Shown here: positions 1,961 to 42,281 of the stretch, piece after piece
How positions within the stretch are numbered: the first letter of the stretch is position 1
Layout of the letters: every line of letters starts with the position of its first letter
Virus record (IMG/VR): IMGVR_UViG_3300023174_002543
Span: 62,001-126,000 of that record
Length of the DNA stretch: 64,000 nucleotides
Strand: one strand, 5' to 3'
Translations under genes and position numbers: made by a program
The notes under the pieces: model-generated
Told to the model about the DNA's origin: nothing
The model's input: only the letters and a program-made list of their open reading frames with translations
The model's database searches: none

Positions 1961-3157
1961 ATGTCACAAGTTCTATTAGAAAGCCGTTGGGATGAGACTA
2001 AAGAAGCCCTACTTGAAGGTCTTAAAGGTACTCGCCGCTCAACAATGCAAGTTATTCTTGAGAATACTCGCAAATCACTTCTTGCTGAATCTTCAGCAGG
2101 CACAACAACTGCAGGTAACATCGCTACATTAAACCGTGTGATTCTACCAGTTATCCGTCGTGTAATGCCAACAGTTATCGCTAACGAGTTGGTAGGCGTT
2201 CAGCCAATGACAGGTCCAGTTGGTCAAATCCATACACTACGTGTACGTTATGCAGGTACTTTGAGTGATACTTCAGCTGCCGCAACATCAGTTCAAGCTG
2301 GTGAAGAAGCATTGAGTCCATTCAAAATTGCTCAAGCATACTCTACACAACGTAGTGACAGCAATGCATCAAGCATTTACACTGGTAATAACACTGCTAC
2401 CCTAGAAGGTAACGGTGGTAAGAATATCAGCGTACAAATCTTGAGACAAGCTGTTGAAGCTAAGTCACGTAAGTTACAAGCAAGATGGACATTTGAAGCT
2501 GCTCAAGACGCACAAAGCCAACATGGTATTGACGTTGAAGCAGAAATTATGGCCGCATTAGCACAAGAAATTACTGCTGAAATCGACCAAGAAATTCTAT
2601 TGTCATTAAGCACATTAGCTACACAAGAGTATACATACAATCAAGCAACAGTATCAGGTACTGCTACATTCGTTGGTGACGAACACGCTGCTTTAGCGGT
2701 TCTAATCAACCGTGCTGCAAACTTGATTGCACAACGCACACGTCGTGGTGCTGGTAACTGGGCAGTTGTATCACCTGCAGCATTGACAGTATTGCAATCA
2801 GCAACTACTTCAGCGTTTGCACGTACAACAGAAGGTACATTCGAAGCACCTACAAACACTAAGTTTGTTGGTACATTGAATGGTGCAATGCGTGTTTTCG
2901 TTAACACATATGCTCCAGACACACAAGCTGTTCTAGTTGGTTACAAAGGTTCATCAGAGACAGATGCAGCGGCATTCTATTGCCCATACATCCCATTGAT
3001 GAGTTCTGGTGTTGTTCTAGATCCATCAACATTCGAACCAGTCGTATCATTTATGACACGTTATGGTTATATCGAATTGACAAACACTGCATCATCTTTC
3101 GGTAATGCAGCAGATTACTTGAGCGAAATCGCTGTAAGTAACTTGACATTCTATTAA
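1961..3157 (+). CDS. gp23: T4-like major capsid protein
   Basis: VIRRVMPTVIANELVGVQPMTGPVGQIHTLR, VEAKSRKLQARWTFEAAQDAQSQHGIDVEAEI, EITAEIDQEIL, FYCPYIPL, SFMTRYG; AGGAG RBS upstream. Confidence 0.97.
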   Translation: MSQVLLESRWDETKEALLEGLKGTRRSTMQVILENTRKSLLAESSAGTTTAGNIATLNRVILPVIRRVMPTVIANELVGVQPMTGPVGQIHTLRVRYAGTLSDTSAAATSVQAGEEALSPFKIAQAYSTQRSDSNASSIYTGNNTATLEGNGGKNISVQILRQAVEAKSRKLQARWTFEAAQDAQSQHGIDVEAEIMAALAQEITAEIDQEILLSLSTLATQEYTYNQATVSGTATFVGDEHAALAVLINRAANLIAQRTRRGAGNWAVVSPAALTVLQSATTSAFARTTEGTFEAPTNTKFVGTLNGAMRVFVNTYAPDTQAVLVGYKGSSETDAAAFYCPYIPLMSSGVVLDPSTFEPVVSFMTRYGYIELTNTASSFGNAADYLSEIAVSNLTFY

Positions 3158-3272: not shown

Positions 3273-3983
3273 ATGGCAGCACCAGATCCATTCAATTCAG
3301 TAGGCGGTTATACAGTTGGAATCCCACCGCTACCAATTATTTCAGCTAATGGCAATATAAGTGCGGGTAATATCTCTGCTGATAATCTAACTATTACCTC
3401 TAATGTAACAGTCGGCGGAGATATTCGTGCGACCGGAGACATATATGGAGATACTTTTTATGGTAAGTTCGATGGCGCCATATCAGGAACATTAAATGTT
3501 CCGGGATTGTCTACTCAAATACTTTACAATACAAATGGTAATGCCGATGCTAGCCAAAATTTAACCTTTAATGCATCTACAAATACCCTTACTGTTCTAA
3601 ATGGATCTGTAACAGCTAATTCAATTACATTGGGTACAGGTCAAAATCAATTTAATACATCTTCTGTGTTTCGTTTAACTACATCTAGTACTGCACCTGA
3701 TCAAATATTAAATACAGTAAACGCATCTACAGTTTGTAGTATGGATTATATGATTATAGCAACTGATCCTGTAGCAAGCCGTAGACAAACAAGCAAAATT
3801 ATGGCTACTATATTAAACGGAAATGTTGAATATTATGAATACGGTACAATACAGGTACCTAATACAAGCCCGGGAGTCGCGGATCTTAAAGTGGCATATG
3901 TTGGTGGCAACGTTAATTTAACAGTAACACCTCTAACTAATAGTGTCAACTATAAAATAATGATAACAAGTTATAAAGAATAA
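3273..3983 (+). CDS. Virion fibre/decoration-like protein; N-terminal FNxxxG motif, C-terminal ~100-aa beta domain (here 'X')
   Basis: 236 aa; starts MAAPDPFNSVGGYTVG; C-terminal domain shared with 6026 and 10234. Confidence 0.6.
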   Translation: MAAPDPFNSVGGYTVGIPPLPIISANGNISAGNISADNLTITSNVTVGGDIRATGDIYGDTFYGKFDGAISGTLNVPGLSTQILYNTNGNADASQNLTFNASTNTLTVLNGSVTANSITLGTGQNQFNTSSVFRLTTSSTAPDQILNTVNASTVCSMDYMIIATDPVASRRQTSKIMATILNGNVEYYEYGTIQVPNTSPGVADLKVAYVGGNVNLTVTPLTNSVNYKIMITSYKE

Positions 3984-8333: not shown

Positions 8334-8347
8334 ATAAGTATATAAAT
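8334..8347 (+). promoter_or_regulatory. Late promoter-like ATAAGTA / TATAAAT
   Basis: Intergenic ATAAGTA immediately followed by TATAAATG overlapping the start codon. Confidence 0.4.
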
Positions 8348-10232
8348 GGCAATCAAAAATTTTAATGTTGAACATGGCTTATCTGTCAATGATGTAACAA
8401 TCGTAGACAGTAATGCCAATGTTACTGCAAATACTTTAATATCTAATAACATTATTAGTACTAGCGGCACTAATAGTAATATTACCATCAATCCTGATGG
8501 TACCGGTATTATTGATGTAAGCAATAAAAAGATTAGTAATTTAGCTGAACCAATACTTGCAACAGACGCTGCTACAAAGGGTTATGTAGATGCGACTGCT
8601 CAAGGATTGAGTATTAAAAACTCAGTTCAATATGCAACAACTACTAATATTTTATTAGACGGAACAGTAACTACAATAGATGGTAAAACAGTAACTACCG
8701 GAGATCGTGTTCTAGTTAAAGACCAAACAGATAAAAGTAAAAATGGTATATACATAGCAAATACCACAGGTTCATGGACTCGTTCAGCAGATATGAATAT
8801 TGCTACTGAGATTTATGGTGCATTTACATTCGTTGAGACAGGTACTGAAAATCAATCAACTGGATGGGTAACTACTAATTCACCGCTAGATCCATTCACA
8901 TTGAATACAACTGATATAATATGGACACAGTTTAGTGGTACAGGTTCAGATATCAGTACAGATATAAACACGTTACATGTAACAGGTGGTACAAAAGATT
9001 ATGTATTGGCAGCTTCTGATAGTTTAGGTAACGTTGCTTTTGCTAATATTGCAAATTATTTCTTAGTTAAAACTGATATAACTACAGTGGTTGCAGGATC
9101 TACATTGGCCTTTACAATAGACTATGCTAATACTAGCTATCCCGGTGGAATATATACATTACAGCAATTGGGCCCGGTAAGTATGTCAATAAGCGACCAG
9201 TGGTCAATATCAGGTTCTAACGTTGGGACAACAAAAAACGCTTATGCAAATTATGTAGCAACTCAAGTTAATACTGCAAATGTAACAATAGCATTTACGT
9301 TAGCTAATGCTAATTTTAGTTTACAAACAACGGATACATTAACTATTGGTAGCACAGTAATAAATGACAGCAGTTCACCTAATCTAAGAACATTGTTATC
9401 TTCAATAAATGGAGTAAGTTCAGGTACTGTTACTATTCCAGCTACGAGTTTAAATGCAAACATAAACGCTAATGGGTTGAATACGGTAACAAACATAGTA
9501 AGCGTCAACCTTACTAATAGTAGAGGATCAACCGGTGCAGGTGTAAGTACGGCAAGTGGTACGAGTTTAGTGGCGACTGCTCCTACTGCATATAGTGTAA
9601 ACTCTATATCAGGTAGCTTCCCAAGTAGCAGTATACCATATTGGAGTTTAAATCAAACGTTTAACTGGACAGTGAGTACTACGGGCACTACTAGTGCGGG
9701 CAATTTAACATATAGCGGTGGCGCAATAAGCACTACCAGTTTATCAAGTGTGGGTGGCGCAAGCGGAACTAGCGGTAGCATAGATAGCACAAGTAGTTAT
9801 ACTATTACAACTAGTGATTATTATGGATTAGGATTAAATGGATATGGTAATAGAACTATTCCTAGTGCAGTAAATGGTACAGTAAGTGCTGCAACTAAAT
9901 ATTATCCGTTGTTTTGGAAGACAACTTCCAGTAGTGCATTACCAACCATAACAGTTAGTGATAGCCGTAATTCTAATAACTATGCTCTAGGGCAAGGTGC
10001 TACTACATCAACCACTGCTAGTAATTATCTTTGGTTAGCTATACCAAACGCAGGTAATGCTGCACCTTTGGCAAGTCATACCTTTAAGCATGTGTTTGGT
10101 GGATTTGATATTGTTGATACTCCTACGGTAACGGGCACACAATCTATATCTTCAGGCGGACAGAGTTACAATTATTCAATATATGGCTTTAGTGGTTTTA
10201 CGACAGCATCACTTATAATAACAACATCATAA
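8346..10232 (+). CDS. Tail-fibre-like protein with DAATKGYVD stalk, GDRVLVKDQ domain and C-terminal ~380-aa region 'Y'
   Basis: 628 aa; ISNLAEP..TDAATKGYVD and GDRVLVKDQT..KNGIY..WTRSAD are common phage fibre motifs; C-terminal region paralogous to 19408. Confidence 0.65.
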   Translation: MAIKNFNVEHGLSVNDVTIVDSNANVTANTLISNNIISTSGTNSNITINPDGTGIIDVSNKKISNLAEPILATDAATKGYVDATAQGLSIKNSVQYATTTNILLDGTVTTIDGKTVTTGDRVLVKDQTDKSKNGIYIANTTGSWTRSADMNIATEIYGAFTFVETGTENQSTGWVTTNSPLDPFTLNTTDIIWTQFSGTGSDISTDINTLHVTGGTKDYVLAASDSLGNVAFANIANYFLVKTDITTVVAGSTLAFTIDYANTSYPGGIYTLQQLGPVSMSISDQWSISGSNVGTTKNAYANYVATQVNTANVTIAFTLANANFSLQTTDTLTIGSTVINDSSSPNLRTLLSSINGVSSGTVTIPATSLNANINANGLNTVTNIVSVNLTNSRGSTGAGVSTASGTSLVATAPTAYSVNSISGSFPSSSIPYWSLNQTFNWTVSTTGTTSAGNLTYSGGAISTTSLSSVGGASGTSGSIDSTSSYTITTSDYYGLGLNGYGNRTIPSAVNGTVSAATKYYPLFWKTTSSSALPTITVSDSRNSNNYALGQGATTSTTASNYLWLAIPNAGNAAPLASHTFKHVFGGFDIVDTPTVTGTQSISSGGQSYNYSIYGFSGFTTASLIITTS

Positions 10233-10233
10233 T

Positions 10234-12510
10234 ATGGCAGCAGCAACCCTTACCTTCCCCTCACAAACGTTACTTAAGAACGTTGTTGTTCCAGTTGACG
10301 GAACAGATGCTGCTACCAAAGAATATGTAGATGGTAGAACAGGCGCCGGCAGTGTTGCTGCAGCCGGTTCTAATACACATATTCAATTTAATGATGCCGG
10401 TAGTATAGGTGCCAGTGCAAATTTAACTTTTAATAAATCAGGTAATATACTTACTATTACCGGTAACTTAGTATCAAGTAACGCTAATCTTGGTAATCTA
10501 GCAACAGCGAACTATATAAACATTGCAAATAATTTATCAGTCGCCGGCGATGCAAATATTACTGGTAACTTGACAGTACTTGGTACAGTATCCTACATTG
10601 AATCTACTACTACATATGTTACAGATCCTTTATATGAAATAGGCGGAGGTTCGCAGGGTACAACTTTATCAACGGATGATAATAAAGATCGCGGTACTAT
10701 ACTTCACTATTTTGACACTACTCCTATAGACGCTTTTATAGGTTGGGATAATAGTAATGCTGAATTTGCTATTGCGAGTAACGTTTCTGTAACTGATAAT
10801 ATTGTAACTTATAATAATTTTGGTAATATCAGAGTAGGTAATATTTTTGCCGGAAACGTAGTAAATGCTAACTTCTATACCGGTGACGGTGGACTACTTT
10901 CTAATATTATAGCATCTAGTGGTACTGCAACTACAGTCACGGCAAGCACACAACCAAATATTACTAGTCTCGGCAACTTAGTAGAATTGACAGTAGGTCA
11001 AGGATTATCTAATGTATACATTAATGGTTTTGGTAATATTACGGTTGGTAATAAGATAACTACTACCAATTTAACTGTAACCGGTAACTCTATGTTACAA
11101 GGAAATACAGAATTTCAACAAATTGTAACTCTAACATCCTCAGCGAGTAGTACAAATTCTAGCACCGGTGCATTGATATTAACATTAGGTGGTTTAGGTG
11201 TATATGGTAATATACATTCAGGAATGGGAGTCACTGGAGTTACTTTAACTGGTAATATTACTACCGCAAGTCAACCTAATATTACCTCTTTAGGTAATCT
11301 AGTAAGTTTAATAGTAGGAAACTCTACTGCAAATAGTACGTTTGGTAATGGAACTATAACTCTAACAGGTGCAGGTAATATTACAGGTGGTAATCTAGTA
11401 AGTGCTAATTATTTTACCGGCACATTAACAACCTCAAGTCAGCCAAATATAACATCAGTCGGGACGTTAAATAACACAACATTAGGCGCAAGTAACTCAT
11501 TATCAGGTGGTAATCTAGTAAGTGCTAATTATTTTACCGGCACATTAACAACTGCAACTCAACCAAATATTACAAGTTTAGGAACACTAGTAAACGTAAC
11601 GGTGTCCGGTACATCTAATTTAGGAAATGTAGGAAATGTTAGGATTACCGGTGGTAGTTCAGGCCAATACTTAAAAACAGACGGTACTGGAAATTTAAAT
11701 TGGGCTACAGTAGATACATCAAGACTAGCGAACGGTACTACTGAAATAGAGTTATTAGAAGACGGTAATATTAATTTTACCGTAGGAACACAAACAAATT
11801 CAGTTATTTTTGTGGATGATGGTAGTGTTGTTCTTGGTTCAGGTACCGGTGGAAATATCGAAGGTGCCAATGTTGTAAATGCAAATACTTTAGCAGCAAG
11901 TAATACAATAACACGAAATGGAAGAAACGTACCAACATTTGTTAGTTCAGGCACAATGCCAACTAATCCGTTATTAGGTGATGAATGGTACGATCAGGAT
12001 GACGACAGAGTTTATCAATACATCTATGATGGTGCAAATTATAATTGGGTAGAGATAAGCAGTGGTTACATCGCTGCCAATGTAGCTGCTCAAACCGGAA
12101 CATTAGTAGTAAGAGATAGTAATGCCAACGTATATGCCAACACTATACATGCCAATGCTTTAAGCGTTACTGGTACTGCTAAAATGGGTAGTATAGTCAG
12201 CGCAGGAAATGGACAGTCAGTATCTAATTCAACTGAAACTATGATTGATACCTTTCCCAAAACTTTATACAGGTCTGCTAAATACATTATATCAGCAAGA
12301 AATGATGATGGTTTCGAAGTGGCAGAAATGCTACTAATACATGACAATATGATTAGTTTTATACAAACATATGGTGATGTTAGTACTGGGACAGTACAAG
12401 ATATTGTAACTTTTAGTAGCAATATTGTAAGCGGAAACGTCTGTCTATATGCAACAGGGAGTAATTCAAATACATACGTAAATTTAGTATCAACTTATGT
12501 AACTGATTAA
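10234..12510 (+). CDS. Fibre-like structural protein ending in domain X
   Basis: 758 aa; DAATKEYVD, QFN..ASANLTF, DP..DRG module, four QPNIT repeats, GDEWY module, X domain. Confidence 0.65.
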   Translation: MAAATLTFPSQTLLKNVVVPVDGTDAATKEYVDGRTGAGSVAAAGSNTHIQFNDAGSIGASANLTFNKSGNILTITGNLVSSNANLGNLATANYINIANNLSVAGDANITGNLTVLGTVSYIESTTTYVTDPLYEIGGGSQGTTLSTDDNKDRGTILHYFDTTPIDAFIGWDNSNAEFAIASNVSVTDNIVTYNNFGNIRVGNIFAGNVVNANFYTGDGGLLSNIIASSGTATTVTASTQPNITSLGNLVELTVGQGLSNVYINGFGNITVGNKITTTNLTVTGNSMLQGNTEFQQIVTLTSSASSTNSSTGALILTLGGLGVYGNIHSGMGVTGVTLTGNITTASQPNITSLGNLVSLIVGNSTANSTFGNGTITLTGAGNITGGNLVSANYFTGTLTTSSQPNITSVGTLNNTTLGASNSLSGGNLVSANYFTGTLTTATQPNITSLGTLVNVTVSGTSNLGNVGNVRITGGSSGQYLKTDGTGNLNWATVDTSRLANGTTEIELLEDGNINFTVGTQTNSVIFVDDGSVVLGSGTGGNIEGANVVNANTLAASNTITRNGRNVPTFVSSGTMPTNPLLGDEWYDQDDDRVYQYIYDGANYNWVEISSGYIAANVAAQTGTLVVRDSNANVYANTIHANALSVTGTAKMGSIVSAGNGQSVSNSTETMIDTFPKTLYRSAKYIISARNDDGFEVAEMLLIHDNMISFIQTYGDVSTGTVQDIVTFSSNIVSGNVCLYATGSNSNTYVNLVSTYVTD
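11384..11552 (+). repeat. 49-bp perfect direct repeat, 120-bp period
   Basis: CAGGTGGTAATCTAGTAAGTGCTAATTATTTTACCGGCACATTAACAAC at 11384-11432 and 11504-11552. Confidence 0.85.
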
Positions 12511-12542: not shown

Positions 12543-13094
12543 ATGGCTAATAAGTATTTTAACGTAAGACAAGGTCTCCAGACCGGAAATATAACGTTAG
12601 ACGCCACGACGGGAAATGCCAATGTAGGCAATTTGTCCACTACGGACTTGAACGTAGCTGGAAACTTAAATTCGAACCTAATACCTAAGGTCGCATCTGG
12701 CGTACCTTCAGTTCTGTCATTAGGTACCAATCTACAACGATTCAAAGATTTATATCTGTCAGGAAATGTCAATCTTCCTGGTGGACAAACACTCACTGGC
12801 AATACGGATACTGCTAGTTTTTCTGGGAATGTATATACCCCAGGTGCACTAACAGCAAACGTCATAAATGCCAACACTATAGCAGTAAATACAGAATTTA
12901 CGCTAAATAGTACTATAAATTCAACTTCTACTGATACTGGTGCATTTACAACTATGGGCGGAATCGGAGTGAAGAAGGATGTAACAGTGGGGGGTGCTAT
13001 TAATTTAGCCAACTTTGCTGTTACAGGAACAACAGTTAGAAGCAGCATTTACCATGATGATACTTCTAACTCAATAACGTTTAAATTTAATTGA
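12543..13094 (+). CDS. Short fibre-like connector protein ending SITFKFN
   Basis: Track starts at TTG 12531; ATG 12543 gives MANKYFNVRQG, which matches the paralogous N-termini; C-terminus matches that of 14047. Confidence 0.6.
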   Translation: MANKYFNVRQGLQTGNITLDATTGNANVGNLSTTDLNVAGNLNSNLIPKVASGVPSVLSLGTNLQRFKDLYLSGNVNLPGGQTLTGNTDTASFSGNVYTPGALTANVINANTIAVNTEFTLNSTINSTSTDTGAFTTMGGIGVKKDVTVGGAINLANFAVTGTTVRSSIYHDDTSNSITFKFN

Positions 13095-13107
13095 TAGGAC
13101 ATAATAA

Positions 13108-14004
13108 ATGGTAGCACCAACAACAATCGGAGCAAGATTATTAAATGATGGTACACTCTACACAGTGGGTACATTTGATGACACCGGCACTACAACAACC
13201 GGACATTCAATCACAAAAGAACATATATTTGCTGATGAATTAGACGAATTAGCACTAAATACCGGTGCCCCATCTGGAGGCTCGGTGTTGCTTAATGGAT
13301 CTAGTCAACGCATAGATGTCACTGGGTCAGAGAGTTTTATGTTTGGCACACAGGACTTCACTATTGAAGGATGGTTCGTATTATCGTCAACTTCATACGC
13401 ACGACTATGGTGTTTCCCAGACGGAGATAACGTAGAAGCCGTAAATGGTACCTTATATTACTGGAATGGTACAGGTAGTGTTTTGACCGCAGGTACGGGA
13501 TCAGCTCCGCAAGGTCGTTGGTTTCATGTAGCACTAGTAAAACGTAACGGTGTAGCAAAAGTATATCTAAACGGTGTAGCAGTAATTACTGATAATAGTC
13601 CATATAATTCAATATCATCAAGACCATTAAGTATTGGCGGTGAAGTAGGTCTTAGTACAGTTGGACAAGATCCAACTGCAGGATCAAGAGACGGTTGGTT
13701 AAATGGCAACGTAACAAATTTTCGTATAGTAAAGGGTCTAGCAGTTTATACAAGTAATTTTAGTACTGCTTATAACCCTCTTACTTCAATACCAAACACA
13801 GTTTTATTACTAAATGTAGTAAATTCTGGTAATTTAGTAACAGATAGTTCGTCACAGAATCAAACTGTTACCAATATTGGCAGTGCGACTTATAGCGCAC
13901 TAACTCCGTTAAGTACATACTTCAACGGCGCAATGAAACAATTGAAAAATGGTGCATTGCTACTAGCAAATGAGTTAGTTGAAACAGACTCAGTATTATC
14001 ATAA
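13108..14004 (+). CDS. Small core protein 'Z' carrying one inserted LamG/concanavalin-A-like domain
   Basis: DFTIEGW, WFHVALVKRNG, VTNFRIVKGLAVYTSNF; N- and C-terminal flanks align with the 76-aa ORF at 19149. Confidence 0.75.
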   Translation: MVAPTTIGARLLNDGTLYTVGTFDDTGTTTTGHSITKEHIFADELDELALNTGAPSGGSVLLNGSSQRIDVTGSESFMFGTQDFTIEGWFVLSSTSYARLWCFPDGDNVEAVNGTLYYWNGTGSVLTAGTGSAPQGRWFHVALVKRNGVAKVYLNGVAVITDNSPYNSISSRPLSIGGEVGLSTVGQDPTAGSRDGWLNGNVTNFRIVKGLAVYTSNFSTAYNPLTSIPNTVLLLNVVNSGNLVTDSSSQNQTVTNIGSATYSALTPLSTYFNGAMKQLKNGALLLANELVETDSVLS

Positions 14005-14046
14005 ACGTAATACATTAAACTTAAACATTCTTAAAGGAAAAATAAA

Positions 14047-17000
14047 ATGGCAAAATTAAAAAGCGGTACTAGAGTTTATGGTGATGCAACAGTCGACCAA
14101 ACACTAACCGTAGGTAATATAACAATCAGCGGTAACTTAGTAGTTCAAGGACAAACAACGTCTGTAGATAGCACAGTTACTAGAGTAGAAGACCCAATCT
14201 TTGAGATTGGTGGCGGTGAAGCAGGCGCGGCACTTACATCAAATGACGGTAAAGAACGTGGCATATTGATGCATTATTATGATGGCGCCGTAAAAGACGC
14301 TTTCATGGGATGGCATACAAGTAATGCACGTTTTGAATTTGGAGCAATAGCTACTGAATCATCTGGTAACATTACAGTTGGAACATACGGTAATCTTAAA
14401 GCAGGTGTATTCTTTGGTGATGGCGGCGGATTAAGCAATATCGTTGGTGGTAACGTAAGCGGAGACGTAGCAGCTGCAAACTATGCAAACTATGCAGGTA
14501 CAGTAACAGGGTCAGCACAAAGTAATATTACCAGTACTGGTACATTAACAAGTTTAACAGTTAGTGGTACAAGTAATGTTGCGGCTATTAGTTCAAATGG
14601 TGCTATTACTACTAGCGGTAGTATTACTGCAAATGGTGCTAGTTCAAATCTTACAATTGGTACATCAGCAGCAAATAATAGCGTTGCAAACATTTATGGT
14701 GACTTGAATGTTACCGGTAATCTAAATGGTACATTTACTGGTACTATCGGTGCTAAGGGCTCTAACACACACGTTCAGTTCAATGATAATGGTCAACAAA
14801 ACGGTGTTGCTGGATTTACATTCGACAAATCAACTAGCACAGTAAGTATCGCTAATATTGTTTTAGCAGGGGCTGCCGGAACTGCAAACTTTAAGGGTGA
14901 TATTAACTTAACAGGTACAAGTCAGACTATTGCTGGTGCCAACATTAAAGTTGATGCATCAACTCAATTAGAATTAGAAGGCGGAACAGCAAATATTACA
15001 TTGACTAGTTCTAATGTTAAATTAGCAACATCAGGTGGTACTGCTAATTTAGACAACACTGGTAAATTGACTGTATCTGGTGCTGCTGATTTTGCAGGCG
15101 GTAACTTCACAGTCACTACAGCTGGTAATATTGATGCTAAACGCGGTGATTTCACAAGCATCAAAAACACCGGATTAACTGATAATCAACTAGTGTTCAC
15201 TACAGGTAATGTATTGGGTGGTAATGCAGGATTAACATATGCATCTAACACATTAAGTGCTAATAACTTTGCAACTACAAATGCAAATATTACTGGTAAT
15301 ATTACAACTAAGTATAACAGTGGTAAATTATTGACTACTGATGTTGGTGGTAATTTAATTGAATCAAATGTATCATTTTCGTCAAATGAATTAACAGTTG
15401 CTAATGCTAATATAACAAATACTGCAACAATTGCTAATTTAAATATTACTAGTTTAACAACAACAGGTGGATTGTTATTCACTGGCGGTGCTAGCGGTAA
15501 TGTTACCGAGTCAGCAACTTTAACATTCACAGCGATTACTAACACACTATCTACTACTAATATTACTGCTAGTGGAAATGTAGTAGCTAATGCAATAACA
15601 TCTAATAACTTAACTGCTACACAATTAGTATTTGCTGGTGCTAGCAAAGAGTTAACATCTGATTCACACTTAACTTTCACAACAGTTAGTAACACATTAT
15701 CTACTACTAATATTACAGCTAGTGGAAATATTATTGGTGCTAGAGTTACTGCAAACAATGTGGCTGATTCTGAAATCGCATATGCTAACATTGACCATAC
15801 ATTGGTTGGTGCGTCTTCATTCACATATAATGCCGGTACAAGTACTTTATCTGCTCCTAATGTTGTTTCAAGTTCTAGTATAATAGGTGCTAAAGTTTCT
15901 GCAAATAATATTGCCGATACTCAAATCGCATATGCTAACGTTGACCATACTTTAGTAGGTAGTTCATCATTCACATATACTCCACTTACAGGCACATTAG
16001 CAGCTAATAATGTCTCAGTAACTAGTAATGTAACAGCTGCTAATGTATTCGCTAGTACTGTTGGTAATTCAGCTACAATGTTATATGGTAATGGTTATAA
16101 CATTACCGGTGTAGTTGCTAGTTCTGCTAATGCGGAAACACTAACTGGTACATATATCAATGCAGGTGTTACTGGTTCTAGTTTAACTAGTTTAGGTACC
16201 ATGAATAATATCACTATGGGCGGTGCTAATAGCATCAGTGGTGGTAATTTATTAAGTGCTAATTATGTCACAGGTACATTAACAACTGCAGCACAACCTA
16301 ACATTACTAGCTTAGGTAATTTAACTGCTGCAAATGTAACTGGTAATTTACAAGCAGGTGGTATTTTAACTGATAACTTGTACTATGCAAATGGTGGTGT
16401 TTGGGACTTACAACAAGCCGCAGGTGACACTAGTGAGATTCAATTCAACAACGGTGACAACTTTGCCGCAAGTGCTAACTTCACATTTAACTCAGGTTCT
16501 AGTACACTAACTGTAACTGGTACTGGTAATATCACAACGGTAAATGCTACAACAGTAACCGCTACAACTGGTAATATCACAACTGTAAATGCTACAACAG
16601 GTAATATCACAACTGTTAACGGTACAACTGGTAACATTACTACTGTAAATGCTACAACAGTAACAGCTACAACTGGTAATATCACAACTGTAAACACTAC
16701 AGATATTGTTGCATCAGGTAATGCTAATATCACTGGTTGGTTAAAGGCTGCTGATACAGTTATTACTGGTAACTTAACTGTTACAGGTACAACAACAAGT
16801 GTCAATACAACTACATCACAATTAACTGATCCATTACTTGATTTAGGTAACGGTGCAAATGGTGCAGCATTAACAACTAATGATGCATTTGATCGTGGTT
16901 TAGTAATGCATACACGTGTTGCGGGCACAAACAAAGACTTGTTCATGGGTTGGGATACATCTAACGCTGAATTTGTTATGGCTAAAAACGTAACAGTATC

Positions 17001-19137
17001 AGATAACGTTGTTACAGTTCCAGGAACTACTGATGCTGAAAAATTAGCAAACTTGGCTGATTTGCGTTTAGCAAACATTTATGCATACAATGCAAACTTT
17101 GGTGGTGTCGTATTCTCACAAGGTAATGTTACATTAGGTGCTGGATCATTCTTGAACGGTAATGTTAATGGTAATATCAGTGGTACTATTACTGTAACAG
17201 GTGGTAATGGTGCAATTCAATTTGCAAATGCAACCAATGCAATGACATCTAGTTCTAATTTGAATTTCAATGATTCTCTTGCTAGATTAACACTAGGTAA
17301 TGGAACAACTACCGGTGAACTTAAGGCTAATGTAGTAACTGCAAGTTATGTAGCAGGTACATTGACAACTGCAAGTCAGCCAAATGTAACTTCAGTTGGT
17401 ACACTAACAAGTTTAGATGTTACTAATGCAGTAACTGCAGGTTCATTCAAGTCTGACACATATCAGTATGCAAACGGTAGTCCAATCGACTTCCAAACTG
17501 CTGCAGGTAGTGCAACACAGATCCAGTTCAAGTCATCAAGTGGTAACGACTTAGATGCAAGTGCAAACTTAACATTTAATTCATCTACTAGTAACTTAAC
17601 AGTTAATGGTAACATTATTACTGGTGCAGGTTCTGGTGGTAATATCAGTGGTGCTAACGTAGTTAGCGCAACATTGTTCAGTGGTTCTGGTGCTAACTTA
17701 ACAAATATTAACGGTGCAAACGTAAGTGAAGTTGCATTAGCAACTAATGTTACTGCAAGCGCACAAGGTAATATTACTAGCGTTGGTACATTAACTGGAT
17801 TGACAATTGTTGCTAACGGTGACATTACTCTAAGCGGAGTAGACTCAAATATCAGTGGTGCTAATCTAATAAGTGCTGGTTACTTTAGTGGTAATGGTAG
17901 CGCATTGACTGGTGTAACTGCTACGTCAATGAATGCAGCTAATTTGACTGGTTCAACATTGTCAAGCAATGTAACAGGTTCTAGTTTAACTAGTGTTGGT
18001 ACATTAACAAGTTTAACTGTAACTGGTTCTATCACATCATCTACTGGTGACTTAGTTGCAACACTTGGTAATGTAAGTGGTAATGTTATTACAGGTACTA
18101 CATTAACTGGTACATTAAGTACTGCAGCACAACCAAACATTACAAGTGTTGGTACATTAACAAGTTTAACTGTTGCTAATACAGGTGGTTCTGGTAACAT
18201 TACTGCTGATAATGTATTTGCTAATGCAGGTATTGTAAGTGGTCAATACTTATACGGTAATGGTATAAACATCTCTAACATTGCTGGTGCTAACGTAAGT
18301 GGTTATGTACAGAATGCTAATATTGCAAATGTTGCTTACGCAGTGGCTGCAGGTAACATCACAGGTACTACATTGAACAGCAACATTGTAACTTCTAGTT
18401 TAACAACTGTTGGTACATTGGGTAGTTTAAGTGTAACTGCTACTATTACTGCTGGTAATGTACTTGCTAGTAATATTGGTAATGCAACAACAATCTTACG
18501 TGGTGATGGTGCTAATATTACAGGTGTAACAGCTAGTGCAATTGATGCAGGTAATTTAACTGGTCAAACATTATCAAGCAATGTAATTTACAGTAGCTTA
18601 ACATCTGTTGGTACACTAAGTGGACTAACTTCTAACGGTACTGTAAACTTTACTACTGCAAGTAACGTATCATTGGGCCCAGTCGCTAATGTTCATATTA
18701 CAGGCGGTACAACTGGTCAATATCTACAAACTGATGGTTCTGGTACATTAAGTTGGTCAACTGTCTCATTATCAAATATCAATAATGGTACAAGTAATGT
18801 CTCAGTAGCTAACAACGGTAACGTAACTGCCGCAATAGCCGGTAGTAATGTCATCACTATCGCTACAGCTGGATTAACTGTAACAGGTATCATTGAAGCA
18901 ACAGGAAATATTCTTGGTAATAATATTACTAGCAATAATTTCATTACTGCTAATGGTACAACTGCTGCAACAAGTGCAGCAACTGGTGCAATTAAATCAG
19001 AAGGGGGTATATCTGCTAAAGGTAACATCTACACAGGTGATGCATTAGGTTTCGCACATGGTTCTGGTAACACAGATAGTGCTGCATACATCAAATATAA
19101 CGCAACTGCAGGTAGCATAGACTTTATCTTCAATTAA
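14047..19137 (+). CDS. Long repetitive fibre protein (1696 aa)
   Basis: Starts MAKLKSGTRVYG; two DP..DRG modules, several QFN modules and QPNIT-type repeats, pentapeptide repeat; ends SIDFIFN. Confidence 0.7.
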   Translation: MAKLKSGTRVYGDATVDQTLTVGNITISGNLVVQGQTTSVDSTVTRVEDPIFEIGGGEAGAALTSNDGKERGILMHYYDGAVKDAFMGWHTSNARFEFGAIATESSGNITVGTYGNLKAGVFFGDGGGLSNIVGGNVSGDVAAANYANYAGTVTGSAQSNITSTGTLTSLTVSGTSNVAAISSNGAITTSGSITANGASSNLTIGTSAANNSVANIYGDLNVTGNLNGTFTGTIGAKGSNTHVQFNDNGQQNGVAGFTFDKSTSTVSIANIVLAGAAGTANFKGDINLTGTSQTIAGANIKVDASTQLELEGGTANITLTSSNVKLATSGGTANLDNTGKLTVSGAADFAGGNFTVTTAGNIDAKRGDFTSIKNTGLTDNQLVFTTGNVLGGNAGLTYASNTLSANNFATTNANITGNITTKYNSGKLLTTDVGGNLIESNVSFSSNELTVANANITNTATIANLNITSLTTTGGLLFTGGASGNVTESATLTFTAITNTLSTTNITASGNVVANAITSNNLTATQLVFAGASKELTSDSHLTFTTVSNTLSTTNITASGNIIGARVTANNVADSEIAYANIDHTLVGASSFTYNAGTSTLSAPNVVSSSSIIGAKVSANNIADTQIAYANVDHTLVGSSSFTYTPLTGTLAANNVSVTSNVTAANVFASTVGNSATMLYGNGYNITGVVASSANAETLTGTYINAGVTGSSLTSLGTMNNITMGGANSISGGNLLSANYVTGTLTTAAQPNITSLGNLTAANVTGNLQAGGILTDNLYYANGGVWDLQQAAGDTSEIQFNNGDNFAASANFTFNSGSSTLTVTGTGNITTVNATTVTATTGNITTVNATTGNITTVNGTTGNITTVNATTVTATTGNITTVNTTDIVASGNANITGWLKAADTVITGNLTVTGTTTSVNTTTSQLTDPLLDLGNGANGAALTTNDAFDRGLVMHTRVAGTNKDLFMGWDTSNAEFVMAKNVTVSDNVVTVPGTTDAEKLANLADLRLANIYAYNANFGGVVFSQGNVTLGAGSFLNGNVNGNISGTITVTGGNGAIQFANATNAMTSSSNLNFNDSLARLTLGNGTTTGELKANVVTASYVAGTLTTASQPNVTSVGTLTSLDVTNAVTAGSFKSDTYQYANGSPIDFQTAAGSATQIQFKSSSGNDLDASANLTFNSSTSNLTVNGNIITGAGSGGNISGANVVSATLFSGSGANLTNINGANVSEVALATNVTASAQGNITSVGTLTGLTIVANGDITLSGVDSNISGANLISAGYFSGNGSALTGVTATSMNAANLTGSTLSSNVTGSSLTSVGTLTSLTVTGSITSSTGDLVATLGNVSGNVITGTTLTGTLSTAAQPNITSVGTLTSLTVANTGGSGNITADNVFANAGIVSGQYLYGNGINISNIAGANVSGYVQNANIANVAYAVAAGNITGTTLNSNIVTSSLTTVGTLGSLSVTATITAGNVLASNIGNATTILRGDGANITGVTASAIDAGNLTGQTLSSNVIYSSLTSVGTLSGLTSNGTVNFTTASNVSLGPVANVHITGGTTGQYLQTDGSGTLSWSTVSLSNINNGTSNVSVANNGNVTAAIAGSNVITIATAGLTVTGIIEATGNILGNNITSNNFITANGTTAATSAATGAIKSEGGISAKGNIYTGDALGFAHGSGNTDSAAYIKYNATAGSIDFIFN
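16525..16704 (+). repeat. Coding tandem repeat of 12 pentapeptides (GNITT/VNATT/VTATT)
   Basis: Read directly from the translation; 15-nt periodicity in the DNA. Confidence 0.85.
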
Positions 19138-19148
19138 GGAGATAGGTC

Positions 19149-19379
19149 ATGACATCTAATGTTGCGGCTAGACTAGATAGATCCGGAAAGTTCTACACCA
19201 GAGATGGTGTAGTGCTTGACGAGGTTACTCAATCAACTCACGGTATTACGCCAACAAAGGTATATGCAGGTGAGTTGGATGAAGTGACAACTCCGGACAG
19301 TAATAGGGTCATGCAGCAAAAGAAAACGGGTAAACTTATTATTTCAGGAGTTTTTGACGAGGTGTCTGGAATAACATAA
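19149..19379 (+). CDS. Small core protein 'Z' (76 aa) without insert
   Basis: AAGGAG RBS; ARL..SG.FYT..G..LDE and MQQKKTGKLIISG.FDE align with the flanks of 13108. Confidence 0.75.
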   Translation: MTSNVAARLDRSGKFYTRDGVVLDEVTQSTHGITPTKVYAGELDEVTTPDSNRVMQQKKTGKLIISGVFDEVSGIT

Positions 19380-19382
19380 GTA
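19376..19382 (+). promoter_or_regulatory. Late promoter-like ATAAGTA
   Basis: One mismatch to ATAAATA; overlaps a stop codon, 26 nt upstream of the ATG at 19408. Confidence 0.35.
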
Positions 19383-19407
19383 ATAGTATAGGAATAAACC
19401 AGAGACC

Positions 19408-21783
19408 ATGGCACTATTAAAATCAGGTACAAGAATATACGGTAACGCTATTATAGACACTAATCTGTCTATTGATGGTACTACCGTATCCTCTGATTAT
19501 CAAACAGGTGCATTAGTAGTTAAGGGCGGGGTTGGCATCGCCGGTAACGTTTTTATTAATGCCAACTTAAACGCTAAAGATACATTAATTACAGGTAATC
19601 TAACAGTTACCGGTACAACCACAACTGTAAATTCAACTACTACCCAATTAGTAGATCCAGTCATTGATATAGGTGGAGGGGCAAATGGTGCTGCACTTAC
19701 TACTAATGACGGATTGGCTAGGGGTCTAGCATTAAATTATTATAACGTTGGTGCAAAGACAGCATTCTTAGGATTTGATAATGCAAATGGGCAATTTGCT
19801 TTTGGTAGTAACGTAAGTAATACTACAGGCACATTGACTATAAACACTTACGGTGATGTAAAAGCAAATAGTTTTGTTGGAAACCTAGTAGGTACTGCTA
19901 ATTTATCTCAAATAGAAGTTAACGGTATATCAAGATTTGGCAACGTGGGTAATGTTAAAATTACCGGCGGCGCTGATGGGTATGTGTTAAGAACAGACGG
20001 ACAAGGTAACTTAACTTGGACAACACCGTCGACTGCTGTTGCAGCTGGATCTAATAATCAAGTACAGTTTAACAACACTAATGCATTTAATGCTAGTGCT
20101 AACTTTACATTCAATAGTTCAACTAAGACATTAACAGTAGATAATATTGTTAGTAACGGTTCCGGGCTAACAAGTTTAACAGGTGCTAATGTAACTGGAT
20201 TTGTACCAAATGCAAATATAGCAAATACTGCATATAATGTTGATGGCGGCAATGTATCAGGGCAAGTAGGTAATGCATTAATAGCCGGTACAGTATATAC
20301 AAACGCACAACCAAATATAACTTCAGTTGGGACACTAAGTTCATTATCAGTTACCGGAAATATAAGTTCAGGTAACGCTACTTTAGGTAACTTAACAACA
20401 AGTAATTATTTTGTTGGTAATGGTAGTTTATTAACTTCAATAACTGGTGCTAATGTAACTGGTCAAGTAGCAAACGCATTAATAGCCGGTACTGTATATA
20501 CAAACGCACAACCAAATATCACAAGTGTCGGTAATCTAAGCAATTTATTTGTAGGTAATGCAACATCAAATGTAGTTATATCAAATGGTAATATAACTAC
20601 CTCAGGAGCATTAAGTGTTGGCGGCAATATTACAGCAAATTATATTACTGCTAACTTAGCATATGCTACTGGTTTAGGTGGTGCAGGTGGCGCAGCCGCA
20701 ACATATGTTACAAGTAACATTACAAGTATTGTGGCAGGTAGTACTATTGCAGTTGTAGCGGATTATGCTAATGCTAGTTATCCAGGTGGTGTATTTACAA
20801 TCGCACAATTGGGTCCGGTAACATTAAGCGCAACAGATGTTTGGACTGGCGGGACATCAACTAAAAATGCATACGCTAATTTTCTTGCAAGTTCAATCAA
20901 TACCAAAGATGTTAATGTTACATTAACATTAGCAAATGCTACATTTGACGTAAAAAGCACAGATAGTATAACGATTGGTGGTAGTAGCGTAACAGGTGCA
21001 AATCTGTTAGCATTGAATATTACTGGTAATGGAACATACACTATACCAAATACATATTTTAGTAGTACTGTTCAAACCACTACTACTAGTGCGGTCAGTA
21101 TAAGTTTAACTACAAGTAGAGGTGTTTATTCTAGTAGCGGAACAACACTTACTGCAACTCAACCAGTAGCATTTACATTAAATGCATTAACAGGTAGTTT
21201 CCCAAGTAGTTCAGTTCCTTACTTTAACTTAAATCAAAGTTTCAATTGGAGTGCTAGTGTAACTGGGACAGTAAGTTCTGGTAACATTACTTATAGCGGT
21301 GGCGCAATAAGTCCAACAAGTTTAACTGGTGCAGGTGCAACTAGTGGAAGTAGTGGAAGCATTGACAGTACATATAGTTATACTATAACATCCAGTGACT
21401 ATTATGGTGCTGGATTATATGGTTATGGTTCTAGAACAATACCAAGTACAGTAAATGGTACTGTAACTGCAGCAACAAAATACTATCCAGTATTCTATAA
21501 AATAACAAATAATTCAACTATACCAACGTTGACTACTAGCGATAGTTATCTAACACGTAACTATGCAATAGGTGATGGTGCAACAACTAGCGCAACAACT
21601 AGTCAATATTTATGGATAGCAATTCCAGGCACAAGTAGTCATACTTTTGCTTATACATTCTTAGGCAGTCAAGTTGGTCAAGATCCAGCAGTGACTGGCA
21701 GTCAAACAATTTCTGGATATTCTTATAATATCTATGGGTTCACGAATTTCTCTGTGGCCACTGCTTTATATACGGTGACATAA
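19408..21783 (+). CDS. Fibre-like protein with C-terminal region Y
   Basis: 791 aa; starts MALLKSGTRIYG; C-terminal ~355 aa paralogous to 8346 (YPGG..T..QLGPV, FPSSS.PY..LNQ.FNW, TKYYP.F.K, Y.IYGF). Confidence 0.65.
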   Translation: MALLKSGTRIYGNAIIDTNLSIDGTTVSSDYQTGALVVKGGVGIAGNVFINANLNAKDTLITGNLTVTGTTTTVNSTTTQLVDPVIDIGGGANGAALTTNDGLARGLALNYYNVGAKTAFLGFDNANGQFAFGSNVSNTTGTLTINTYGDVKANSFVGNLVGTANLSQIEVNGISRFGNVGNVKITGGADGYVLRTDGQGNLTWTTPSTAVAAGSNNQVQFNNTNAFNASANFTFNSSTKTLTVDNIVSNGSGLTSLTGANVTGFVPNANIANTAYNVDGGNVSGQVGNALIAGTVYTNAQPNITSVGTLSSLSVTGNISSGNATLGNLTTSNYFVGNGSLLTSITGANVTGQVANALIAGTVYTNAQPNITSVGNLSNLFVGNATSNVVISNGNITTSGALSVGGNITANYITANLAYATGLGGAGGAAATYVTSNITSIVAGSTIAVVADYANASYPGGVFTIAQLGPVTLSATDVWTGGTSTKNAYANFLASSINTKDVNVTLTLANATFDVKSTDSITIGGSSVTGANLLALNITGNGTYTIPNTYFSSTVQTTTTSAVSISLTTSRGVYSSSGTTLTATQPVAFTLNALTGSFPSSSVPYFNLNQSFNWSASVTGTVSSGNITYSGGAISPTSLTGAGATSGSSGSIDSTYSYTITSSDYYGAGLYGYGSRTIPSTVNGTVTAATKYYPVFYKITNNSTIPTLTTSDSYLTRNYAIGDGATTSATTSQYLWIAIPGTSSHTFAYTFLGSQVGQDPAVTGSQTISGYSYNIYGFTNFSVATALYTVT

Positions 21784-30138: not shown

Positions 30139-30510
30139 ATGGCAGCACCAAATTTAATCGGGGCAACAACAATAAACGGTAAAACCGCAGGGGCAAATTT
30201 AACAACAACAAGCGCAACACTAGTATTAAACAATGCGTCAAGTTCTGGTAAATGTTTGAAAGTAAACACACTAAACGTTACTAATACTACTAGTTCAGCA
30301 GTAAACATAACTATTGCATGGTACAATCAAGCAAGTTTAGGCGGCACAGCTTTTGCTATAGCAAGTGGTATGAGTGTTCCTGGTAATGCAACATTGAACG
30401 TAATTGATAAAAGTAGTCAATATTACTTAGAAGAAAATACAAGTTTAGGCGCCACCGCCGGTACCGGCAGTTCATTGATAGTAACTTGTAGTTACGAGGA
30501 CATTAGTTAA
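30139..30510 (+). CDS. Small beta-rich adaptor-like protein
   Basis: 123 aa; paralogue of 41919 (MAxPN..TTI.GKTAG, YLEEN.SL, CSYE.IS). Confidence 0.6.
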   Translation: MAAPNLIGATTINGKTAGANLTTTSATLVLNNASSSGKCLKVNTLNVTNTTSSAVNITIAWYNQASLGGTAFAIASGMSVPGNATLNVIDKSSQYYLEENTSLGATAGTGSSLIVTCSYEDIS

Positions 30511-39810: not shown

Positions 39811-40140
39811 ATGGCAATAGTTTATAAAGTATTAGGACAATTAAATCCATCGGCAGCAACAGCAACAACATTATATACAGTACCTGCAAGTACAAGTACA
39901 GTAGCGTCTACTATTACAATTTGTAATCAAGCTGGAAGTAGTGACAATTATAGAATTGCAATTAGACCTGCAGGAGAAGCACTAGCCGCAAAACATTATA
40001 TTGCATATAACGGTGTTATTCCGGCATATGATAGTATAAGTTTAACAATTGGTATAACATTAGCAACAACAGATGTAGTTACCGTATATGCGGGTACTGC
40101 TAATTTAAGTTTTAATTTATTTGGTTCGGAGATTAGTTAA
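39811..40140 (+). CDS. Small beta-rich adaptor-like protein
   Basis: 109 aa; MAIVYKVLGQ..P.AATATTLYTVP ... FGSEIS; distant paralogue of 30139 and 41919. Confidence 0.6.
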   Translation: MAIVYKVLGQLNPSAATATTLYTVPASTSTVASTITICNQAGSSDNYRIAIRPAGEALAAKHYIAYNGVIPAYDSISLTIGITLATTDVVTVYAGTANLSFNLFGSEIS

Positions 40141-41918: not shown

Positions 41919-42281
41919 ATGGCAAATCCAAACATAGTAAACGTAACGACAATCACAGGAAAAACAGCAGGACAGGCTATAACAACATCACCAACTGCAA
42001 TAGTAACTAATAGCGCCAGTAGTGGAAAATTATTAAAAATAAACTCATTATATATTTCAAATGTTAACGGGACAGGAAGTGCAGACGTTACAGTAGATGT
42101 TTATAAAAATGGTGCTACTGCTTATAGATTGGCATATTTAATCACAGTACCGGCAAAATCAACTATAAATGTAATTGCAAAAGATGTACAAGTTTATTTA
42201 GAAGAAAATGATAGTTTAAGATTAACTGCTAGTAGTAGTAGTTACCTTGAAGGTGTATGTAGTTATGAGGAAATTAGTTAA
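41919..42281 (+). CDS. Small beta-rich adaptor-like protein
   Basis: 120 aa; paralogue of 30139, ends CSYEEIS. Confidence 0.6.
   Translation: MANPNIVNVTTITGKTAGQAITTSPTAIVTNSASSGKLLKINSLYISNVNGTGSADVTVDVYKNGATAYRLAYLITVPAKSTINVIAKDVQVYLEENDSLRLTASSSSYLEGVCSYEEIS

What the first reader, a model, noticed from the sequence alone, without database searches (positions are those of the whole stretch)
12925..19470. Junction type 3: ...SIxFxFN tail, then small core Z, then MAxLKSGTRxYG fibre (twice in tandem)
Seen: 12543 ends TGAFTTMGGIGVKKDV...SITFKFN and 14047 ends TGAIKSEGGISAKGNI...SIDFIFN. Each is followed by a Z gene (13108, 19149) and then by a gene starting MAKLKSGTRVYG or MALLKSGTRIYG. Inference: Z is a coupling collar joining one fibre's C-terminus to the next fibre's N-terminus.
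Basis: partly seen in the sequence, partly recalled or inferred. Interest (0 to 1): 0.7.

Follow-up and report, generated by a model that had tools for sequence, protein, structure and literature searches.

The report
Three-hairpin coupler joining phage tail fibres
In this uncultivated giant phage, two small unannotated "Z" proteins, each built from three copies of one hairpin motif, most likely act as single-copy knee joints linking three trimeric tail-fibre proteins end to end, as gp35 does in phage T4.

Summary

A profile of the core finds 205 representative proteins. The core stands alone, is split by an insert, or sits at either end of cargo proteins of up to about 2,000 aa. It is never fused to either partner motif. 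In every true core locus I could read, it lies between a fibre with the tail motif and a fibre with the MA-x-L-x-x-G(S/T) start.

The parts
12543..13094 (+). Fibre A (183 aa), the first segment of the chain. Its N-terminus MANKYFNV... resembles the N-termini of other fibre genes in the window. Its C-terminus carries the tail motif.
   Evidence: Conserved at 171-270 aa in 13 related loci.
13020..13091 (+). Tail docking motif of A: the last 24 aa, ...VTGTTVRSSIYHDDTSNSITFKFN.
   Evidence: Alignment A3: F87 and F89 are invariant and S84 is nearly invariant across 16 A and B tails.
13108..14004 (+). [not shown]
14047..19137 (+). Fibre B (1696 aa), the middle segment. It has the N-terminal docking motif and the C-terminal tail motif.
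   Evidence: The shaft shares modules with cyanomyovirus structural proteins.
14047..14118 (+). N-terminal docking motif of B: MAKLKSGTRVYGDATVDQTLTVGN.
   Evidence: Alignment A4: M1, A2, L4, R9, Y11, G12 and D17 are invariant; residues 1-12 are 71% identical across 20 downstream fibres, against 31-37% further in.
19063..19134 (+). Tail docking motif of B: the last 24 aa, ...SGNTDSAAYIKYNATAGSIDFIFN.
19149..19379 (+). [not shown]
   Evidence: 62 homologue clusters, 24 invariant columns; repeat-to-repeat hhalign P 2e-13, 6e-7, 1.4e-6; pLDDT 45 alone; pLDDT up to 82 in the complex.
19408..21783 (+). Fibre C (791 aa), the distal segment. It has the N-terminal docking motif. Its C-terminal domain is related to that of the gene at 8346-10232.
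19408..19479 (+). N-terminal docking motif of C: MALLKSGTRIYGNAIIDTNLSIDG.

Best explanation

The Z core is a ~75-aa module of three homologous hairpins, each ending (F/L)-D-E-V-(T/S). On its own the core is disordered. At a junction, one copy of Z folds against the fibre ends. In the model, the first strand of each of its three repeats pairs with the C-terminal strand (...S-I/L-D-F-I-F-N) of one chain of the upstream trimer. One polypeptide thus satisfies a threefold end.

This is the logic of the T4 long-tail-fibre knee: (gp34)3 - gp35 monomer - (gp36)3. Here it is reduced to its minimal core and used twice in tandem.

Shown: the motifs, the repeats, the synteny and the range of architectures. 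Predicted by a model: the 3:1 tail-Z interface and the N-terminus contact. Inferred: the order of assembly, hinge flexibility and the role of the LamG domain.

For: (b) Conservation. The block recurs in 13 related loci. The same flanks occur around Z cores of very different architecture: L017 (1139-aa protein with a C-terminal core), L018 (core plus LamG), L019 (75 aa), L021/L024/L027 (462-aa glycine-rich protein plus core), L025/L029 (80 aa), L028 (core plus 600 aa), L030, L031, L042 and L043. One pattern hit, L022, was an unrelated fibre repeat.

(c) Only the docking ends are conserved. Residues 1-12 of 20 downstream fibres average 71% identity, against 37% for residues 13-24 and 31% for 31-110.

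(d) Triple repeat. hhalign gives R1-R3 probability 98% (P 2e-13), R1-R2 92% (P 6e-7) and R2-R3 90% (P 1.4e-6).

(e) Complex prediction. Scores were 0.52, 0.62 and 0.79, median 0.62, best of three controls 0.00. That mark was reached by 58 of 80 solved complexes and 2 of 110 mismatched pairs; these counts hold only roughly here, because my own alignments were used. Runs agreed in at least 49% of their contacts. Partner pLDDT was 48, 67 and 82.
  - These are the equivalent first strands of repeats 1, 2 and 3. The repeat structure was not given to the model.

(g) Architectures. Among the best 150 of 205 representatives, 31 are stand-alone, 39 have an N-terminal core, 37 a C-terminal core and at least 11 a split core. 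None carries the tail motif or the N-terminal motif. That is what a 1:3:3 stoichiometry predicts.

(h) T4 precedent.
  - gp35 is a monomer that binds trimeric gp36 and then joins trimeric gp34 (PMC3004832).
  - Its anchoring 'tower-like' domain is built from residues 1-21 plus 324-372, with globular domains inserted between (bioRxiv 10.64898/2026.03.06.709160).
  - gp35 is absent from the PDB copy searched, so the high score is unlikely to be recall of a solved structure.
Against: - There is no experimental evidence. The phage is uncultivated and there is no virion proteomics.
- The complex held only two of the three downstream N-termini, because of the six-chain limit. Their contacts are not among the 40 most confident pairs.
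- The alignments used were my own and shallow (16-30 rows).
- All loci surveyed are metagenomic. Many belong to related lineages, so part of the synteny is inherited rather than independently maintained.
- Sequence similarity to T4 gp35, gp34 and gp36 is not significant.
Confidence: 0.7

Rival explanations
1. Z binds only the C-terminal tip of the upstream fibre, as a cap or tip adhesin in the way T2-type gp38 sits on gp37. The downstream MA-x-LKSGTR fibre attaches elsewhere, for example to the baseplate or to another fibre.
Confidence: 0.15
2. [not shown]
Against: There is no match to any chaperone family in Pfam, PHROGs or NCBIfam. The core is fused to large structural-looking cargo, including LamG domains and repeat proteins of 1,000-2,000 aa, which a transient chaperone would not need. 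The tight link to the downstream N-terminal motif is left unexplained.
Confidence: 0.07
3. The three elements travel together only as a gene cassette inherited by descent. The end motifs are general fibre-folding signals and there is no specific three-way contact.
For: All examples come from metagenomic phage contigs of possibly related lineages. The TGA-x4-GG-x-G motif upstream of the tail is a common fibre motif and also occurs near the N-terminus of C.
Against: Other fibre genes in the same window lack both motifs. Only the terminal 12-24 residues are conserved, while the fibre bodies and the Z cargo have been exchanged. The predicted interface is specific and the controls scored 0.00.
Confidence: 0.04

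Closest known systems
Phage T4 gp35, the long-tail-fibre 'kneecap' or proximal connector, with its partners gp34 (C-terminus) and gp36 (N-terminus)
   Same: - Gene order is fibre, small connector, fibre (T4 genes 34-35-36).
- The connector is a single copy between two trimers (PMC3004832).
- By eye the ends look alike: gp34 ...KTVKFEWVE, gp36 MADLKVGST..., gp35 ...KTGKVFGQEFREV.
- gp35's N-terminal hairpin and its first C-terminal hairpin are related to each other (P 1.4e-4). This hints at a repeat-built anchor there too.
   Different: - There is no significant sequence relationship. Whole-domain hhalign gives P 0.01-0.08. The best of nine segment comparisons gives P 1.1e-4.
- The Z-core profile finds nothing in the T4 genome at E <= 10.
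- In a rank test over the T4 six-frame translation, the gp36 N-terminus ranked 17 of 1158, the gp35 C-terminus 20 of 633, and the gp34 tail did not score.
- Z has no ILEI/PANDER domain (PF15711 is found in gp35 but not in Z).
- The joint is used twice in tandem here.
Laminin_G_3 / concanavalin A-like lectin domains of phage structural proteins (PF13385)
Tip-binding fibre accessory proteins: T2-type gp38 adhesin, and Tfa or T4 gp38 assembly proteins (from general knowledge)
   Same: They are small proteins encoded just downstream of a fibre gene and bind its C-terminal end.
Branched tailspike and fibre assemblies built on trimeric T4 gp10-like adaptor domains (CBA120, G7C, RaK2-like jumbo phages; from general knowledge)
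   Same: They let several receptor-binding proteins share one attachment point, and they are common in large phages.

Membership tests
T4 gp35 (long tail fibre kneecap / proximal connector) | Detectable sequence homology to the gp35 family | tested here: not met
   hhalign of a 109-sequence Z-core alignment against a 21-sequence gp35 alignment gave probability below 4% and P 0.013-0.079. The best single-hairpin match gave P 1.1e-4 in one of nine tests. The Z profile finds no match in the T4 genome.
T4 gp35 (long tail fibre kneecap / proximal connector) | ILEI/PANDER-like domain (PF15711) plus a CBM-like domain | tested here: not met
   [not shown]
T4 gp35 (long tail fibre kneecap / proximal connector) | Gene lies between the gene of the proximal fibre and the gene of the next fibre segment | tested here: met
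T4 gp35 (long tail fibre kneecap / proximal connector) | Anchor domain formed from N- and C-terminal segments, with globular domains inserted | tested here: met
   [not shown]
T4 gp35 (long tail fibre kneecap / proximal connector) | One copy contacts the C-terminus of one trimer and the N-terminus of the next | tested here: inconclusive
   [not shown]
[not shown]
   41.3 bits against a cut-off of 27.6. The model has pLDDT ~90 over residues 55-268. Foldseek finds LamG and pentraxin structures at E ~1e-7.
Tail fibre assembly chaperones and adhesins (Tfa, gp38 types) | Match to a known chaperone or adhesin family | tested here: not met
   [not shown]

The most novel reading that the evidence does not exclude
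The Z core is a general, previously undescribed 'socket' module of environmental phages. It is a single polypeptide that mimics threefold symmetry with three hairpins. It joins any fibre carrying the tail motif to any fibre carrying the MA-x-LKSGTR start, and at the same time displays an arbitrary monomeric cargo at the joint. If so, fibre connectivity and branching could be read directly from genome sequence by matching end motifs. T4 gp35 would be one highly derived member of this class.
Probability: 0.45. Interest if true: 0.75.

Novelty: new variant of a known kind. Interest (0 to 1): 0.62.

Why it matters
How multi-protein phage fibres are wired together is known in detail for very few phages, and genome annotation cannot yet predict it. 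Four things would follow if this holds.

- A three-part sequence code (tail motif, triple-hairpin core, N-terminal motif) would predict which fibre proteins are joined end to end, in a large group of uncultivated phages.
- It would offer a simple structural answer to the 3:1 symmetry mismatch at a fibre knee.
- The 76-aa core is a small, tractable model for the poorly resolved T4 gp34-gp35-gp36 joint.
- The core appears to carry many different cargo domains, so it may be a natural way of adding lectins or side branches to fibres. That bears on host-range evolution and on engineering modular receptor-binding proteins in laboratory phages.

Tried and rejected
- **Homology to T4 gp35, gp34 and gp36.** The ends look alike by eye, but the resemblance did not survive testing.
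  - Whole-domain hhalign was not significant.
  - The Z profile found nothing in T4.
  - The rank test gave gp36 N-terminus 17 of 1158, gp35 C-terminus 20 of 633, and no score for the gp34 tail.
  - I keep T4 as the functional analogue only.
- **Cultured relatives by capsid protein.** Vibrio phage 2.275.O and PA5oct-like phages share ~67% identity in the major capsid protein. The 2.275.O region after the capsid gene has no comparable fibre block.
- **Solved structures.** The only PDB sequence hits to the core are chance EFDEVT matches in fatty-acid-binding proteins, with E above 0.06.
- **ESM Atlas.** It returned only unannotated viral clusters, with scores below 0.9.
- **The search for related loci with the broad core alignment.** I replaced it with DNA pattern scans.
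- **Contexts without DNA.** Several encoding-contig look-ups returned gene tables only, so the flanks could not be read.
- **Natural fusions.** I searched for Z fused to either partner motif and found none in 150 representatives.
- **Literature.** A search for the FDEVT motif in phage papers found nothing relevant.

Full report
**Context.** The window is bases 62001-126000 of a 367,104-base IMG/VR virus record that CheckV rates as complete. All long ORFs lie on the + strand. The first genes are a T4-type head module. The major capsid protein (1961-3157) is about 67% identical to those of jumbo myoviruses such as Vibrio phage 2.275.O and Pseudomonas phage PA5oct. From about 3.3 kb to 52 kb the window is an almost unbroken run of fibre-like genes. 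After that, an ORF of more than 4,000 codons runs off the end of the window. The DNA has no near match among GenBank phages.

**The observation.** It is correct as written.
- Gene A (12543-13094, 183 aa) ends ...SITFKFN.
- Gene B (14047-19137, 1696 aa) starts MAKLKSGTRVYG and ends ...SIDFIFN.
- Gene C (19408-21783, 791 aa) starts MALLKSGTRIYG.

The gaps between genes are 11-42 nt and each holds a Shine-Dalgarno-like AGGA or AAGGAG. Across the whole genome there are only these two long ORFs ending F-x-F-N and only these two KSGTR N-termini. There are only two Z cores, by protein search and by profile. The pattern is exact and exclusive, so it is not chance.

| Architecture | Count |
|---|---|
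| Core stands alone (135 aa or less) | 31 |
| Core at the N-terminus, followed by other domains | 39 |
| Core at the extreme C-terminus of a longer protein | 37 |
| Core split by an insert | at least 11 |

- N-terminal cores are often followed by Laminin_G_3.
- C-terminal cores include T/S/G/N-rich repeat proteins of 1,000-2,000 aa that start MAxxYWVGGxGxW and have no Pfam match.
- Some inserts lie after repeat 1 rather than repeat 2.
- No Pfam, PHROG or NCBIfam model covers the core.
- The core has no PDB relative and no tblastn match in GenBank phages.

More telling are the distant cores. Some were reached through the representative search (L017, L018, L019). Others came from two DNA pattern scans that specify only two FDEVT motifs and nothing about the neighbouring genes (L020-L031, L042, L043). 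One pattern hit, L022, is an unrelated fibre repeat.

In every other locus, wherever the neighbour could be read:
- The upstream gene ends ...Y-x-(Y/F)-N-x4-S-(L/I/V/F)-D-(F/T)-x-F-(N/G/A/V).
- The downstream gene starts MA-(K/N/L/R)-L-x-x-G-(S/T)-x-(I/V)-YG.

|---|---|---|
| 1 | 0.52 | 48 |
| 2 | 0.62 | 67 |
| 3 | 0.79 | 82 |
| Best of three controls | 0.00 | not applicable |

The median score is 0.62 and the runs agree in 49-80% of contacts. The pass mark was reached by 58 of 80 solved complexes and 2 of 110 mismatched pairs in the tool's calibration. Those counts hold only roughly here, because my own alignments were used and the job is not a simple pair.

- residues 6-10 (AARLD),
- residues 32-34 (within HGITP),
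- residues 53-59 (RVMQQKK).

**Mechanism proposed.** A, B and C are consecutive trimeric segments of one long fibre. A single Z at each joint folds on binding. It uses its three hairpins to satisfy the three C-terminal strands of the proximal trimer, and it offers a platform for the three N-terminal strands of the distal trimer.

A single-copy coupler explains three things:
- why the core is an internal triplication;
- why it is never fused to its trimeric partners, since a fusion would give three cores per joint;

What the LamG domain binds is unknown. By analogy with T4 it could bind a glycan on the host or another virion part.

The T4 ends also look similar by eye, but the resemblance did not pass my tests:
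- Whole-domain hhalign gave P 0.01-0.08.
- The Z profile found nothing in the T4 genome.
- In a six-frame rank test the gp36 N-terminus ranked 17 of 1158, the gp35 C-terminus 20 of 633, and the gp34 tail did not score.

The only hints are single-hairpin matches at P ~1e-4. One is Z repeat 2 against the last hairpin of gp35. The other is gp35's N-terminal hairpin against its own first C-terminal hairpin. I therefore say that Z works like gp35, and I do not file it as a gp35 family member.

**Rivals.**
- A tip cap or adhesin that binds the tail only (0.15). This leaves the obligatory downstream N-terminal motif unexplained.
- A non-structural chaperone (0.07). This is hard to reconcile with the large structural cargo fused to the core.
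- Pure cassette linkage (0.04). This does not fit conservation confined to the terminal residues, or the specific interface.

**Verdict.** The joint is a new variant of a known kind: the T4 knee in minimal, modular form, used twice in tandem. It defines an unannotated protein module that is widespread in environmental phage sequences. All support is computational. Confidence in the mechanism is about 0.7.

Noticed in passing
[not shown]
   Followed up: partly
window 3273, 3995, 8346 and 12543 (gene starts): Four fibre genes share an N-terminal motif MA(I/N/A)(K/R)xFN(V/S)xxG(L/F/Y)(S/Q/T)(V/T)G. The motif at 3273 is more divergent: MAAPDPFNSVGGYTVG. This could be a common docking end for A and three other fibres.
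   Followed up: no
window 30139-30510 and 41919-42281; also 39811-40140: There are paralogous small genes of 109-123 aa. Two of them start MAAPNLIGATTINGKTAG... and MANPNIVNVTTITGKTAG... and end ...SYE(D/E)IS. Each follows a fibre ending ...VFGG(I). The first is followed by a glycine-rich protein ending ...GSGSLTF. This may be another junction or adaptor class.
   Followed up: no
[not shown]
   Followed up: no
window 10234-12510, 14047-19137 (twice) and 19408-21783: A module recurs inside the fibre shafts...V(T/E)DP(L/I)(Y/F)E(I/L)GGG...(D/E)RG...(F/G)W(D/H)(N/T)SN(A)(E/R/Q)F... It is the part that matches cyanomyovirus structural proteins at ~43% identity.
   Followed up: no
[not shown]
   Followed up: yes
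L022 (reverse strand, first ~400 nt): The only false hit of the Z-core DNA pattern is a fibre with a tandem repeat GGATFDEVTVRGGITASGGLYVG. The FDEVT string there sits in a different repeat context and has no Z-type neighbours.
   Followed up: partly
L017:357-641: A 94-aa ORF lies between the tail-bearing fibre and the 1139-aa Z-core protein. It starts MAARYWVGGTDTW, like the N-terminus of the long protein itself. It may be a duplicated or degraded 5' fragment.
   Followed up: no
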